Virus record (IMG/VR): IMGVR_UViG_3300034072_000926
Location: 310,001 to 374,000 of that record
Strand: one strand, 5' to 3'
DNA length: 64,000 nt
Shown here: positions 8,105-62,638 of the stretch, in pieces
Numbering within the stretch: position 1 is the stretch's first letter
Layout: each line of letters starts with the position of its first letter
The notes under the pieces: generated by a model
Databases searched by the model: none
What the model was told of the DNA's origin: nothing
Seen by the model: the letters and a program-made list of their open reading frames with translations, nothing else
Program-made: the position numbers and the translations under genes

Positions 8105-8329
8105 ATGGCACTAGGTGATCGTTATTATAGCGTTGAAGTGCCAAGAGACAATGTCTTGGACGTTGACGGCGACTATTATCGTCCACAATATACTCTTCAC
8201 CGCAAGGTAAAAGACTGGGCCGATGATTATGATATTGATCTCGACTGGTCCTTCGATGATCTCGGCAATGTCTGGTTCGAATTCGATAACCGCGGGGTAG
8301 CGGCTATCTTCCTCCTAAACTGGGCTTGA
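8105..8329 (+). CDS. FKLxW-motif array protein
   Basis: FDNRGVAAIFLLNWA. Confidence 0.75.
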   Translation: MALGDRYYSVEVPRDNVLDVDGDYYRPQYTLHRKVKDWADDYDIDLDWSFDDLGNVWFEFDNRGVAAIFLLNWA

Positions 8330-51605: not shown

Positions 51606-51663
51606 TTTATTTCTCCGTTTGCTGTCTACTCACCTGTTTTAGCACAAACAGGTGAGCAATCAA
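51606..51663 (-). promoter_or_regulatory. Early promoter/RBS cassette with dyad around -10
   Basis: TTGAT-N17-TAAAAC; perfect 11-bp arms ctcacctgttt/aaacaggtgag, 6-nt loop. Confidence 0.85.
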
Positions 51664-51689
51664 CCAGTTTTTCACCTGGATGGAGATTA

Positions 51690-52280: not shown

Positions 52281-52340
52281 TTTCGATCTCCGTATTGTGT
52301 TCCGATGTTCTGATCTTACACTCTGGTGAGATAATGTCAA
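52281..52340 (-). promoter_or_regulatory. Early promoter/RBS cassette with dyad
   Basis: TTGAC-N17-TAAGAT; arms atcttac/gtgagat. Confidence 0.8.
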
Positions 52341-52672
52341 CCAGAGTTACGACAGAAAGCGGGAAGTTTTTCCTTCAGCAGGTCGACCAGGACAGGGTCC
52401 ATGCGCTCATATTCATCAGGAACCCCGAGAACGACCTGTCGCTTGCCGTGCAGGGCCCTCTTCAAAGCCCGGCGACCGGTTGCAGTGTTGCGATGGTGCG
52501 TTTCCATGAACACTACCACGTCTGCCCATTCGACCAGATCAGGGGAAAGAACGACCACTGCATCGAGATCAGTGCCTGCACTTTTCGTTTCCACTTTTTC
52601 GGAGCGGAAAACCTCTTCACCAGTCTTGCTGCGAAGCTTGTTCTGGCTGCATACAAAGAGAAGTTTGGTCAT
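52337..52672 (-). CDS. Low-molecular-weight protein-tyrosine-phosphatase-like protein
   Basis: LLFVCSQNKLRS (CX5R P-loop), SAGT, ADVVVFME, VPDEY. Confidence 0.88.
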   Translation of the reverse strand: MTKLLFVCSQNKLRSKTGEEVFRSEKVETKSAGTDLDAVVVLSPDLVEWADVVVFMETHHRNTATGRRALKRALHGKRQVVLGVPDEYERMDPVLVDLLKEKLPAFCRNSG

Positions 52673-52730
52673 ACTTGCCTCCTGTTTTGTTCCGATAATC
52701 CTGGATTAGCAGAAACAGGAAAGGAGTCAA
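52673..52730 (-). promoter_or_regulatory. Early promoter/RBS cassette with dyad around -10
   Basis: TTGAC-N17-TAATCC; arms tcctgttt/aaacagga (overlap RBS). Confidence 0.8.
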
Positions 52731-52800: not shown

Positions 52801-53088
52801 TTAATCCTCCCGATGATACTTCCGGGTGAGGGCAATTGCAGCATCCAGATCGAGAACCTTTCCGACTTCCCAGCCCTCGATCGTGCCCTTGGAGAGGACG
52901 ACCTTCCGGTCAGGGGTAAAGTCGATATGGATGACCGGAGCGGTCATGTTGTAAATTTCAACATGACGGGCAATGCTGCCCTTGTCGAAATAGCTGCGGA
53001 GCATGAAGCGCATCGCTGCCGGGACAGTCTTGAACGAGCGATCCGAATAATCGCCGTAGGGGCTATTGGGTGCGGTCAGAATCTGCAT
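52801..53088 (-). CDS. Hypothetical protein
   Basis: GAGGAGATCG RBS. Confidence 0.75.
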   Translation of the reverse strand: MQILTAPNSPYGDYSDRSFKTVPAAMRFMLRSYFDKGSIARHVEIYNMTAPVIHIDFTPDRKVVLSKGTIEGWEVGKVLDLDAAIALTRKYHRED

Positions 53089-53105
53089 GTTTCGATCTCC
53101 TCTTT

Positions 53106-53219
53106 ACAGCGCATAATTGACTACCGAGAACCACGTGGACCCTAACCGAACGCATTGTCCAGTTCGTCTGCTTTACTCCGGACTCTAACCGGGCGTCTCG
53201 GTAGTCAACTATGCGCTGT
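53106..53219 (-). ncRNA. Structured 5' leader or small RNA closed by a 24-bp stem
   Basis: Arms 53106-53129 and 53196-53219 pair 23/24; the single mismatch is G-U on the transcribed strand; internal 12-nt direct repeat. Confidence 0.6.
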
Positions 53220-53222
53220 CTA

Positions 53223-53257
53223 CTCACCTGTTTTAGCACAAACAGGCGAGCAGTCAA
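53223..53257 (-). promoter_or_regulatory. Early promoter with dyad around -10
   Basis: TTGAC-N17-TAAAAC; arms ctcacctgttt/aaacaggcgag; near-identical to 51621-51670. Confidence 0.85.
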
Positions 53258-53269
53258 CCAGTTTTTGGA

Positions 53270-53974
53270 TTATTTCTCACCTGATTTTTCAGGTGACTTC
53301 CTTGGGTATTTGGCCAGCATCGCTTTCTGGAGGGCTTTGTGATGTTCCTGTCCAGCAAAGTCAGAATATTTGAAGGAAGCCTTATAGGCAACGCGATCCT
53401 CTTCGCTCATGCTTTCAAGCCAATCCTTGTAAACTTGAGCAGACTGAGCACGCAGGAATTGCTGATCCACAATTTCCTGCATCCACGCGGGGAGTTTGAC
53501 CTCAGGTGCTTTGTCCACATAAGTCTCGTAGATCTCCATCAGAACTGCACGACTGACATCCTTGTCGGAAATTCCACGCCAAATCTCGTATATGGATTTC
53601 TTGGCTGCATCACGGGCTGCACGTCTATCCTCTGGCGTGCTGTAACGCTCAGCAATAGACTTCATATCATGTTCTATAACGCAGATGCGTCGCAGGTCTT
53701 GGCCACCCTTAGAGGGCAGCGACGGGCGTCTGAGATGTGCTGGATTCTGACAGGCTTCTGTCTCGGTAAACGGGATGAAACTGTAGAGGCTTCCATCCAA
53801 ACGTGTGGCGAAAACAGTGTTCATACCATAATGATAGAACCTGCTACCAGGCTTGGTATGGTTTCGGAAAACCTCCTTCAAGGATTCCGGCTGAGCTTCC
53901 CATGAGGGCGGGGGACCACCGGGCTTGCCCGAGTCCCCACCCAATGCTTCGAAGAGTTTCTGTGCGCTTTCCAT
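53270..53974 (-). CDS. Hypothetical protein
   Basis: 234-aa ORF; 9-bp inverted repeat (53975-54005) directly upstream of the ATG. Confidence 0.7.
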   Translation of the reverse strand: MESAQKLFEALGGDSGKPGGPPPSWEAQPESLKEVFRNHTKPGSRFYHYGMNTVFATRLDGSLYSFIPFTETEACQNPAHLRRPSLPSKGGQDLRRICVIEHDMKSIAERYSTPEDRRAARDAAKKSIYEIWRGISDKDVSRAVLMEIYETYVDKAPEVKLPAWMQEIVDQQFLRAQSAQVYKDWLESMSEEDRVAYKASFKYSDFAGQEHHKALQKAMLAKYPRKSPEKSGEK

Positions 53975-61976: not shown

Positions 61977-62375
61977 TTATTTCCGCATGCGAGCGATCAG
62001 GTCAGCCTTTGCCTGTGCGCTCTGTTGGCGACGCTCCTGCCAGGTCGGCTTGGGCTTTTGCTTTGCAGGAATAGGAACCAGATCCAACAAGCCGTCATCA
62101 TCGCGACTGAACAGCTTGTATTCGCCGACACGACGATCCATCAGCATTTGATGGAGGGCTTCATGACGGAGAGCGATCATCTTCGACTCGTCGCTCATTT
62201 CCTCGACCATCTCTCGAATGTTGACCGGGATCGAAATCGCCGACAACGTGATTGACATTGCGGGCTTGTAATAGTCAGTGAGGGCAAGGATCCGACCGAT
62301 CCGATCGTTTATTTTCGGATCCTTGAGCATTGCTTCCACTTGGGCGTCCATGGCCTTGTTGAATTCCTCGCTCAT
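61977..62375 (-). CDS. Hypothetical protein
   Basis: TAATG overlap start 62375. Confidence 0.7.
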   Translation of the reverse strand: MSEEFNKAMDAQVEAMLKDPKINDRIGRILALTDYYKPAMSITLSAISIPVNIREMVEEMSDESKMIALRHEALHQMLMDRRVGEYKLFSRDDDGLLDLVPIPAKQKPKPTWQERRQQSAQAKADLIARMRK

Positions 62376-62638
62376 TAGCACGACTCCCTCTGTTCGAATT
62401 GGATATAGTCCGCAGCATCGTAGAGGCCGAGGCGATTGAGCACCGCACGGGCATCAGCGAGCTGTTCATCCAGTGGGCGCTGCGTCTGTGCATATGCGGG
62501 AATGGACTTCAGATCTTCGAAGATCGAGAACGCCTTGTTTTCCGTGCCGAAAAGCGCACGAGCGACCATTCGATCCTTCGCTTGTGCGATGGCTTCGTCC
62601 TTGGATCCTGCTTCGTAGCTGCTGGGTGCGGTCTGCAT
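62375..62638 (-). CDS. Hypothetical protein
   Basis: Own cassette. Confidence 0.75.
   Translation of the reverse strand: MQTAPSSYEAGSKDEAIAQAKDRMVARALFGTENKAFSIFEDLKSIPAYAQTQRPLDEQLADARAVLNRLGLYDAADYIQFEQRESC

What the first reader, a model, noticed from the sequence alone, without database searches (positions are those of the whole stretch)
53106..53219. 114-nt structured element with 24-bp terminal stem inserted between a promoter and its RBS
Seen: ACAGCGCATAGTTGACTACCGAGA...TCTCGGTAGTCAATTATGCGCTGT closes a 66-nt interior; the only mismatch is G-U on the transcribed strand. The interior holds two copies of CGGTTAG(A/G)GTCC; one forms CCGG-TTAGAGT-CCGG, a 7-nt T-loop-like hairpin. The sibling cassette at 51606 has the same promoter joined directly to its RBS, so this looks like an insertion. 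The stem ends 3 nt before GAGGAG. Established: RNase III cuts long stems; phages use tRNA-like or repeat-like decoy RNAs against defences. Inference: a processed small RNA (decoy or antitoxin mimic), a regulatory leader, or a MITE-like element.
Basis: partly seen in the sequence, partly recalled or inferred. Interest (0 to 1): 0.7.

Follow-up and report, generated by a model that had tools for sequence, protein, structure and literature searches.

The report
Unique hairpin insert in phage leader
One early gene of a 465-kb jumbo phage (relatives infect Sinorhizobium and Agrobacterium) carries a one-off 109-base palindromic insert between its promoter and ribosome-binding site, so its mRNA should begin with a 24-bp hairpin; the feature is real, but it has no relatives anywhere and its function is untested.

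Summary
Window 53106-53219 (minus strand) is a 24-bp inverted repeat around 66 nt. It is the longest inverted repeat in the 465,259-bp phage genome and occurs once.

It splits a standard early promoter-RBS module. That module class (GTTGAC-N14-TGYTA, short leader, GGAGATCG..ATG) occurs 70 times. Among the 39 class promoters with an assignable gene at genome 350-400 kb, this is the only long leader. Five stem pairs (ACAGC) belong to the promoter module, so the net insert is 109 nt.

Four diverged homologues of the downstream 95-aa gene have the same promoter type and no hairpin. The element is therefore a lineage-specific insertion.

No related sequence was found in Rfam, IMG/VR, JGI metagenomes, GTDB genomes, PLSDB, INPHARED or the SRA 31-mer index. 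It has no clear target-site duplication and no second copy, so it fails the MITE definition. The 66-nt interior folds no better than shuffled sequence, so the "T-loop" reading is unsupported. The 12-nt internal direct repeat is significant.

The likeliest role is an insertion-derived cis-acting leader hairpin: a 5'-terminal stabiliser, an RNase III target, or both. A neutral insertion remains a strong rival. Interest is modest.

The parts
53106..53219 (-). Whole hairpin element: 24-bp terminal stem plus 66-nt interior (114 nt).
   Evidence: MFE -59.7 kcal/mol, z -7.6. Longest inverted repeat in the genome and single copy.
53106..53214 (-). Net inserted DNA (109 nt) relative to the uninterrupted paralogous promoter-RBS modules.
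   Evidence: Alignment of the four near-identical cassettes. The junction lies between ..GAGTAGACAGC and AAAG(A)GGAGATCG.
53196..53219 (-). 5' arm of the stem. Its first 5 nt (ACAGC, 53219-53215) are the conserved end of the promoter module.
53106..53129 (-). 3' arm of the stem. Its last 5 nt (GCTGT) complement the promoter's ACAGC.
53180..53191 (-). Direct repeat copy 1, CGGTTAGAGTCC. It lies inside the 4-bp/7-nt-loop hairpin at 53178-53192.
53137..53148 (-). Direct repeat copy 2, CGGTTAGGGTCC.
53230..53258 (-). Early promoter of the class GTTGAC-N14-TGYTA: -35 TTGACT at 53257-53252, TG at 53238-53237, -10 TAAAAC at 53235-53230. The predicted start is about 53224-53222, which is 3-5 nt before the stem.
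   Evidence: Sequence. The class occurs 70 times, 66 on the minus strand, against 2 in the reversed control. The same type lies upstream of the homologues. The start site is inferred, not mapped.
53225..53248 (-). 9-bp/6-nt-loop palindrome embedded in the promoter. It is polymorphic among strains: a stem-perfecting change, and an inverted loop.
53086..53102 (-). Shine-Dalgarno GAGGAG (53102-53097) and ATG (53088-53086). Both are unpaired in the predicted fold.
52801..53088 (-). Downstream 95-aa gene of unknown function, served by this leader.
   Evidence: Four homologues at 52-72% identity. No Pfam family and only a weak PHROG hit (E 0.006, family of unknown function). No informative fold match.
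51606..51672 (-). Sibling cassette: the same promoter joined directly to its RBS and ATG. It serves as an internal 'empty site' control.

Best explanation
The element is a lineage-specific 109-nt palindromic insertion into one copy of the phage's standard early promoter-RBS module. It probably acts in cis on the mRNA.

Shown:
- The insertion site and the absence of the element at paralogous and homologous sites.
- The identity of the element across strains.
- Its uniqueness.

Inferred:
- Transcription from the TTGACT-16-TGcTAAAAC promoter starts about 3-5 nt before the stem.
- The mRNA for the 95-aa protein therefore begins with a 24-bp hairpin of about -60 kcal/mol, followed 3 nt later by a free Shine-Dalgarno sequence.
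- A 5'-terminal stem-loop with only a few unpaired leading bases blocks 5'-end-dependent decay by RNase E or RppH. This is my own knowledge of the ompA-type 5' stabilisers described by Emory, Bouvet and Belasco (1992).
- A perfect helix of at least 20-22 bp is the generic substrate of host RNase III. In read-through transcripts from upstream genes it would work like a T7 R-site or the lambda N-leader site, cutting the cistron free and resetting its 5' end.

The net effect would be expression of this one early gene that is uncoupled in half-life and level from about 50 sibling cassettes that share the promoter and RBS. The 66-nt interior is probably passenger sequence. The role of its 12-nt direct repeat is unknown.
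For: - The junction is defined to the base by three uninterrupted paralogous cassettes.
- 53 of the 61 class promoters with an assignable gene have leaders of 50 nt or less, median 30. This is the only long one among the 39 class promoters with an assignable gene at genome 350-400 kb; the other apparent outlier has an earlier ATG.
- Homologues of the gene in four related lineages carry the same promoter type and a leader of about 30 nt without a hairpin.
- The stem is extreme: z -7.6, and the longest inverted repeat in 465 kb.
- The SD and AUG stay unpaired in the fold.
- The only stem mismatch is G.U on the transcribed strand, and the interior helix uses two more G.U pairs there. MFE is -59.7 on the minus strand against -50.5 on the plus strand.
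- The element is identical in every run that holds it, while the adjacent promoter palindrome varies.
- Contigs of three metatranscriptome runs span the whole element together with the promoter and the start of the CDS.
- The phage has no RNase III or dsRBD gene of its own, so a host enzyme would be the actor.
Against: - No covariation test is possible, because all copies are identical.
- The interior is not structured beyond chance.
- Both strands give similar z-scores, so an RNA-level constraint is not demonstrated.
- The transcription start is predicted only.
- The RNA-library contigs begin about 80 nt upstream of the predicted start and come from one study. They were selected because they hold the element. 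In the one run with other coverage they are no deeper than the coding pieces. They may contain DNA.
- In runs X3 and X5 the promoter's extended -10 is inverted while the element is intact, so the element is not tied to an active copy of this promoter.
- A young neutral insertion would look the same.
Confidence: 0.45

Rival explanations
1. It is selfish or accidental DNA with no selected function. It could be a MITE-like non-autonomous transposon captured from a host. It could also be a scar of illegitimate recombination or a template-switch inverted duplication. In the second case the 3' arm copies the junction promoter-ACAGC plus 5' arm, which would explain why the stem runs 5 bp into the promoter module.
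For: - Near-perfect 24-bp terminal inverted repeats and a MITE-like size of 114 nt.
- Presence in one lineage only.
- The interior has no structure above chance.
- The 3' arm complements the promoter's own ACAGC.
- This region shows microhomology-mediated cassette deletion and a palindrome-loop inversion typical of template switching.
- MITEs do occur, rarely, in phage genomes (PMC11602168).
Against: - Single copy in the genome.
- No unambiguous target-site duplication. A palindromic GC could be read as a 2-bp duplication or as part of the repeat.
- No copy, diverged copy or donor in IMG/VR, JGI metagenomes, GTDB species genomes, PLSDB, INPHARED, Phosso or the related contigs.
- SRA 31-mers of the element occur only together with this phage.
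- No strain with an empty site was seen.
Confidence: 0.3
2. It is a trans-acting or stand-alone small RNA released from the leader by RNase III or other processing. It would act as a decoy or ligand, for example for the phage's own Ro60/TROVE protein or for a host defence sensor.
For: - The overall shape is a closing stem plus internal hairpins, as in Y RNAs.
- The phage encodes a TROVE protein.
- The helix contains UUGACUA/UAGUCAA. From memory this resembles the Ro-binding helix of vertebrate Y RNAs, which is a lead only.
- The element is present in RNA libraries.
Against: - No hit to YrlA, Y_RNA or any Rfam family even at E<=10 on a 321-nt search.
- The helix has no bulged C and the strand order is reversed.
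- The phage has two much better YrlA-like RNAs elsewhere, with a permuted tRNA layout and a bulged helix.
- The element lies 233 kb from the TROVE gene.
- The interior is not structured beyond chance.
- There is no antisense target in the genome; the longest match is 13 nt.
- The RNA contigs span the uncut leader.
Confidence: 0.08
3. It is a DNA-level element. It could be a protein-binding or cruciform site: two inverted GTTGACT boxes and two direct 12-mers 43 bp apart. It could also be an internal promoter (TTGACT-15-TAGAGT inside the 5' arm and first repeat) that drives the gene when the upstream promoter is off.
For: - The significant 12-nt direct repeat.
- Both arms carry the phage's -35 word GTTGAC or TTGACT.
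- In X3 and X5 the upstream -10 is inverted while the element is unchanged.
Against: - The internal -35/-10 pair has a 15-nt spacer, no TG extension, and does not fit the phage's own promoter class.
- No candidate binding protein was found.
- The motifs occur nowhere else in the genome.
Confidence: 0.08
4. It is an assembly or library fold-back artefact.
For: Strong hairpins can be created by chimeric reads. Several low-depth contigs break at the arms.
Against: The identical 114 nt lie in the same context in independent runs from at least four studies. One is a 1613-nt contig at about 25x spanning it without a single change.
Confidence: 0.01

Closest known systems
RNase III processing hairpins in phage early transcripts (T7 R0.3-R18.5 sites; the lambda N-leader site). 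Named from my own knowledge.
   Same: A long double-stranded RNA stem sits in a transcribed spacer immediately upstream of a ribosome-binding site in an early, multi-promoter and poorly terminated transcription unit. The helix is long enough (24 bp) for RNase III.
   Different: T7 sites have an internal loop that directs single cuts and recur between many genes. This one is a perfect helix with a 66-nt interior, occurs once, and no cleavage has been shown.
5'-terminal stem-loop mRNA stabilisers (ompA-type). Named from my own knowledge.
   Same: The hairpin is predicted to start 3-5 nt from the mRNA 5' end, and the SD is left free.
   Different: The stem is much longer than needed. The start site is unmapped and the half-life unmeasured.
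Bacterial and viral MITEs (e.g. Correia elements; vMITEs of PMC11602168)
   Same: About 110 nt, non-coding, terminal inverted repeats of at least 15 bp, intergenic, inserted next to a promoter. When transcribed it would form an RNase III-type stem, as Correia elements do (my own knowledge).
   Different: Single copy, no clear target-site duplication, no related copies or transposase anywhere searched.
PeSL promoter-early/stem-loop cassettes of T4-type phages (PMC2839356, PMC4122927)
   Same: The host module is of this kind. It is a repeated early promoter-RBS cassette in a hyperplastic region of small ORFans, with cassette loss by recombination between promoter copies.
   Different: In a PeSL the stem-loop is the upstream terminator. 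Here the hairpin lies downstream of the promoter, inside the leader, and is not repeated.
Y RNAs / YrlA (Rfam RF02553)
   Same: A closing stem formed by the two ends, internal hairpins, one with a U-U-N-R-A seven-base loop. The phage encodes a Ro60/TROVE protein.
   Different: No covariance-model match, no bulged Ro-binding helix, no D-arm/acceptor layout, and not near the TROVE gene. The phage's real YrlA-like RNAs are elsewhere.

Membership tests
MITE | Terminal inverted repeats of at least 10-15 bp, 50-800 bp long, no coding capacity (PMC11602168). | tested here: met
   24-bp arms with 23 of 24 Watson-Crick pairs, 114 nt, no ORF with an RBS.
MITE | Target-site duplication of 2-10 bp flanking the repeats. 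| tested here: inconclusive
   The flanks GAGTAG and AAAGAG share no direct repeat. If the repeats are taken as 19 bp, a palindromic GC flanks both ends, but it cannot be told from repeat extension. Comparison with empty paralogous cassettes leaves 3 unexplained bases.
MITE | Several copies in a genome or in related genomes (evidence of transposition). | tested here: not met
   One copy in 465 kb. None in IMG/VR, JGI metagenomes, GTDB genomes, PLSDB, INPHARED or Phosso. SRA 31-mers occur only with this phage.
MITE | A parent insertion sequence with matching inverted repeats. | not testable with these tools
   Exact-pattern scans found none. No profile search of host genomes was possible, because relatives cannot be drawn for a virus record.
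RNase III processing site | About 20 bp or more of uninterrupted double-stranded RNA. | tested here: met
   24 bp with one G.U.
RNase III processing site | Lies in a transcript. | tested here: inconclusive
   A class promoter lies 3-5 nt upstream. Contigs in three RNA libraries span it, but DNA carry-over and selection bias are not excluded.
RNase III processing site | Staggered cleavage in the stem that depends on rnc. | not testable with these tools
   This needs end-mapping in infected wild-type and rnc cells. The phage has no RNase III of its own.
YrlA / Y RNA | Match to the family covariance model (RF02553, RF00019). | tested here: not met
   No hit at E<=10. Other loci of the genome score 24-33 bits over the full model.
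YrlA / Y RNA | Ro-binding helix with a bulged C, and a tRNA-like T-arm/acceptor/D-arm module. | tested here: not met
   Perfect helix without a bulge, and an interior no more structured than shuffles. By contrast L060:1501-1610 has both features.
tRNA or tRNA-like element | Cloverleaf, or a T-arm recognised by tRNA models. | tested here: not met
   ARAGORN finds none in the window, although it finds 58 elsewhere in the genome. There is no Rfam tRNA hit. The loop UUAGAGU fits U-U-N-R-A, but the second copy UUAGGGU does not.
Any curated RNA family (riboswitch, ribozyme, sRNA) | Rfam 15 covariance-model match. | tested here: not met
   No hit at gathering score in the window. Only chance-level hits outside the element at E<=10.
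PeSL cassette | A repeated early promoter plus adjacent stem-loop that mediates modular recombination. | tested here: not met
   The promoter module is PeSL-like. The hairpin itself is unique and lies downstream of the promoter.

The most novel reading that the evidence does not exclude
The hairpin is cut out of early transcripts as a discrete RNA of about 70-115 nt. That RNA acts in trans, for instance as a second, non-canonical ligand of the phage's Ro60/TROVE protein or as a double-stranded decoy for a host RNA-sensing defence. It would be a new phage RNA class born by insertion into a promoter cassette.
Probability: 0.06. Interest if true: 0.65.

Novelty: new member of a known kind. Interest (0 to 1): 0.3.

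Why it matters
The phage offers a clean natural experiment. About 50 early gene cassettes share one promoter-RBS design, and exactly one has acquired a 24-bp hairpin at the predicted 5' end of its mRNA. Three near-identical cassettes lack it and serve as internal controls. This makes it easy to test how a single insertion changes mRNA stability, processing and translation in a rhizobial jumbo phage, a group whose transcription has hardly been studied. It also shows one way in which cis-regulatory RNA structure can arise de novo. If the element is instead selfish DNA, it is one of the rare such elements tolerated in a lytic phage (0.01% of viral genomes carry recognisable MITEs; PMC11602168). 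It would then be a possible marker of the host.

Tried and rejected
- Rfam at gathering score on the window, and at E<=10 on 53000-53320: nothing relevant.
- tRNA or tmRNA in the window: none.
- Other copies in the genome (blastn, mismatch patterns, blastn-short): none. The longest stray match is 13 nt.
- IMG/VR, arm 17-mer: two chance hits inside coding DNA with no second arm. The two-motif pattern gave none.
- JGI metagenomes: the two-arm pattern gave none. The two-motif pattern gave ten unrelated tandem repeats.
- GTDB species genomes, 10+10-nt arm pattern: 20 hits, all unrelated repeats or chance. They are tandem repeats in Bacillaceae and others, and none is in Rhizobiaceae.
- PLSDB and INPHARED, blastn at E<=1: no match. 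The 3.1-kb region against INPHARED: none. Phosso genome: none.
- My pattern had the wrong spacer and is uninformative.
- Relatives of the two flanking proteins in IMG/VR and INPHARED: none.
- The X7 loose end that looked like an arm word is simply the coding N-terminus of a diverged homologue.
- Retron, type III antitoxin repeats, CRISPR mini-array, attC, riboswitch and intrinsic terminator were considered from the anatomy and dropped. There is no RT or toxin gene downstream and no repeat beyond 12 nt. The R'/R'' core sites are absent. A 24-bp P1 could not switch. No U-tract follows the stem.
- Phage-encoded RNase III, dsRBD and RegB: none. The RegB search had no positive control.
- Function of the 95-aa protein: Pfam found nothing and PHROGs gave only one weak hit (E 0.006) to a family of unknown function. 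The AlphaFold model is mediocre (pLDDT 64) and Foldseek against PDB has no match at E<=0.001.
- The ORF at 62375-62638 that also starts MQ..AP is not a paralogue.

Full report
**Context.** The window is bases 310001-374000 of a 465,259-bp IMG/VR virus record rated complete. It has 49% G+C and 58 tRNA genes.

The phage has a T4-type major capsid protein (Pfam Gp23). Its nearest isolates are Sinorhizobium phage Phosso (88.5% amino-acid identity, 469 kb) and Agrobacterium phage Atu_ph07 (71.8%). A third relative of this group, Sinorhizobium phage AP-J-162, is described in PMC11242549. The host is therefore probably a member of the Rhizobiaceae; this is an inference.

Genes around the finding lie on the minus strand.

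**The observation.** Read on the minus strand, 53219-53196 pairs with 53129-53106 over 24 bp, with a single G.U. On the plus strand that position is A.C (53116/53209).

- The interior is 66 nt and holds CGGTTAGAGTCC and CGGTTAGGGTCC.
- The stem ends 3 nt before GAGGAG, and the ATG follows 8 nt later.
- The arm word occurs nowhere else with up to 3 mismatches, against 0 in 100 shuffles.
- My scan of the whole genome ranks it as the longest inverted repeat.
- About 4e-5 such repeats are expected by chance.
- The RNA fold is -59.7 kcal/mol, z = -7.6. The plus strand gives -50.5, z = -7.35.

The feature is real. The same 114 nt lie in the same context in contigs of independent sequencing runs. One is a 1613-nt contig at about 25x with no change inside the element.

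**It interrupts a standard module.** Four near-identical copies of a promoter-RBS cassette exist, at genome 361651, 363245, 374715 and 376191, all on the minus strand. Three read ..GAGTAGACAGC-AAA(C/A)GGAGA..ATG. The copy under study reads ..GAGTAGACAGC-[109 nt]-AAAGAGGAGATCGAAACATG.

ACAGC, the first five stem bases, therefore belongs to the promoter module. The insert ends in GCTGT, its complement.

The module is one of a class: GTTGA(C/T)-N13-15-TG(C/T)TA.

- It occurs 70 times, 66 of them on the minus strand, against 2 in a reversed-sequence control.
- It is concentrated at 352-400 kb.
- It is nearly always followed by GGAGATCG and a start codon.

Among the 61 class promoters with an assignable gene, the distance to the start codon has a median of 30 nt, and 53 are at or below 50 nt. 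In the 350-400 kb region only two of 39 exceed 50 nt: this one, and one whose true ATG is earlier.

The motif reads as a sigma-70 extended -10 promoter: TTGACT, 16 nt, TGcTAAAAC. The simple scan missed it only because it requires T at the last -10 position. The promoter assignment and a start at about 53224-53222 are inferences.

**Homologous loci lack it.** The downstream 95-aa protein has four homologues at 52-72% identity in Logan and ENA assemblies. I fetched their contigs.

Directly upstream of the gene, all four have the same promoter type, a leader of about 30 nt, the GGAGATCG-type RBS, and no hairpin. One lineage (L006/L007) has, further upstream, an unrelated 317-nt spacer with its own promoter and terminator.

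The hairpin is thus a derived, lineage-specific insertion.

**No relatives anywhere.** None of the following searches found a related sequence.

- Rfam, including tRNA, Y_RNA, YrlA and riboswitches.
- ARAGORN.
- The phage genome itself.
- IMG/VR.
- JGI metagenomes.
- One genome per GTDB species.
- PLSDB and INPHARED.
- Phosso.

The SRA-wide 31-mer index finds the element only in runs where it sits in this phage's context. No run showed an empty site in an otherwise near-identical strain, although low depth leaves gaps.

**What the inside looks like.** The 66-nt interior alone folds no better than shuffled sequence: z = +0.15 on the minus strand and +0.44 on the plus strand. The "three-way junction with T-loop" is therefore not supported. 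All the statistical signal is in the terminal stem.

The 12-nt direct repeat with one mismatch is significant, being reached by 7 of 2000 shuffles. It remains unexplained.

Weak hints that the transcribed strand matters:

- The stem's only mismatch is G.U there.
- The 8-bp interior helix has two more G.U pairs.

**RNA data.** Three wastewater metatranscriptome runs of one study contain contigs covering 53076/7 to 53304/5, or to 53225 where the graph branches into the sibling cassette. These contigs include the whole element, the promoter, an upstream hairpin (53283-53302) and 12 nt of the CDS.

If this is RNA, the uncut leader exists, and at least some transcripts read through from the upstream gene. 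Several caveats apply.

- The runs were chosen because they hold the element.
- Only contigs, not reads, are available, so there is no strand or end information.
- In the one run with other coverage, the coding pieces are equally deep.
- DNA carry-over cannot be excluded.

**Mechanism.** Whatever its origin, a helix of -60 kcal/mol will form in any minus-strand transcript. Starting 3-5 nt from the predicted 5' end, it fits the geometry of 5'-terminal stabilisers. At 24 bp it is a generic RNase III substrate. These two statements rest on established knowledge of E. coli mRNA decay and of T7 and lambda processing, not on tests here. The SD and AUG stay free. The phage has no RNase III or dsRBD gene.

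I therefore favour a cis-acting leader hairpin that changes the stability or processing of this one early mRNA, at about 0.45. A neutral or selfish insertion is the main rival, at about 0.3.

The MITE label fails on copy number and on a clear target-site duplication. A template-switch or microhomology origin would explain why the 3' arm complements the promoter's own ACAGC. The same region shows two events of that kind:

- A 390-bp cassette deletion between two promoter -35 boxes, with 9 shared bases.
- An inversion of the 6-nt loop of the promoter palindrome in runs X3 and X5.

**The Y RNA lead.** The phage encodes a TROVE/Ro60 homologue. The element is not hit by the YrlA model, but three other loci are hit over the full model length at 24-33 bits.

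Two of these loci fold into the permuted-tRNA layout of YrlA (closing stem, T-arm, acceptor-like hairpin, D-arm). One of the two also has a helix with a bulged C. These, not the element, are the plausible Ro partners.

**Verdict.** This is a real, statistically extreme, unique insertion-derived hairpin in an early-gene leader. It is an ordinary kind of feature with unknown specific function. It is worth one reporter experiment but not a major discovery.

Noticed in passing
G000 129912-130856 (-) = L057; G000 459010-459128 (-) = L059:1501-1619; G000 463617-463726 (-) = L060:1501-1610; G000 8202-8321 (-). All lie outside the window.: The phage encodes a TROVE/Ro60 homologue (E 4e-42). It has sub-threshold, full-length YrlA (RF02553) matches inside its tRNA arrays. 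Two fold as permuted tRNAs (closing stem, T-arm GGUUCGACUCC, acceptor-like hairpin, D-arm). One has a Y-RNA-type helix GAGC[C]GA/UUGCUC with a bulged C. This is a likely phage Ro-Y RNA system in a rhizobial jumbo phage.
   Followed up: partly
window 53225-53248 (-): The 9-bp/6-nt-loop palindrome embedded in the promoter has three alleles among public runs. The window has one stem mismatch. X4, X6, X16 and X25 have 53226 A>G, which makes the stem perfect. X3 and X5 also have the loop inverted (GTGCTA to TAGCAC), which removes the TGnTAAAAC extended -10 from the gene strand. This could be a template-switch mutation or an on/off promoter variant.
   Followed up: partly
window 52336-52725: A variant in RNA run X6 lacks these 390 bp, which hold the 111-aa gene with a weak LMW-phosphatase-like N-terminus. 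The junction shares 9 bases and lies between the -35 boxes of two class promoters. This is cassette loss of the PeSL kind described for T4-type phages.
   Followed up: partly
whole genome, densest at G000 352000-400000 (window 42000-64000 and beyond): About 50 small ORFan cassettes each carry GTTGAC-N14-TG(C/T)TA, a leader of about 30 nt and GGAGATCGAAcATG. Many spacers contain CACCTGTTT- or CACCTATT-like words that often form a small palindrome with the leader. This may be an operator or a recognition element of the early promoter class.
   Followed up: partly
L006:2684-3000 (also L007): In a related phage, the homologue of the 95-aa gene is preceded by a 317-nt spacer. The spacer has its own TTGACA promoter and a GGGGAGAGG-gaaa-CCTCTCCCC terminator. 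It is a candidate small RNA gene with no Rfam match, and it is unrelated to the element.
   Followed up: partly
G000 132100-133040 (L058:11119-12037): A 920-nt stretch without a credible ORF lies about 1.1 kb upstream of the TROVE gene. It has no Rfam hit at E<=1 and may hold unrecognised non-coding RNA.
   Followed up: partly
G000 222209-222282 and 441571-441647; G000 right end (L060:2974-3110): Two tRNAs with a CUA anticodon, called Pyl by ARAGORN, are possible amber suppressors. The relative AP-J-162 is reported to have the same. A 3' part of a tmRNA is cut by the end of the record.
   Followed up: no
window 53283-53302 (-): A hairpin TCACCTG-AAAAA-TCAGGTGA lies inside the last codons of the upstream 234-aa gene. 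The RNA-library contigs of two runs start 2-3 nt before it.
   Followed up: no
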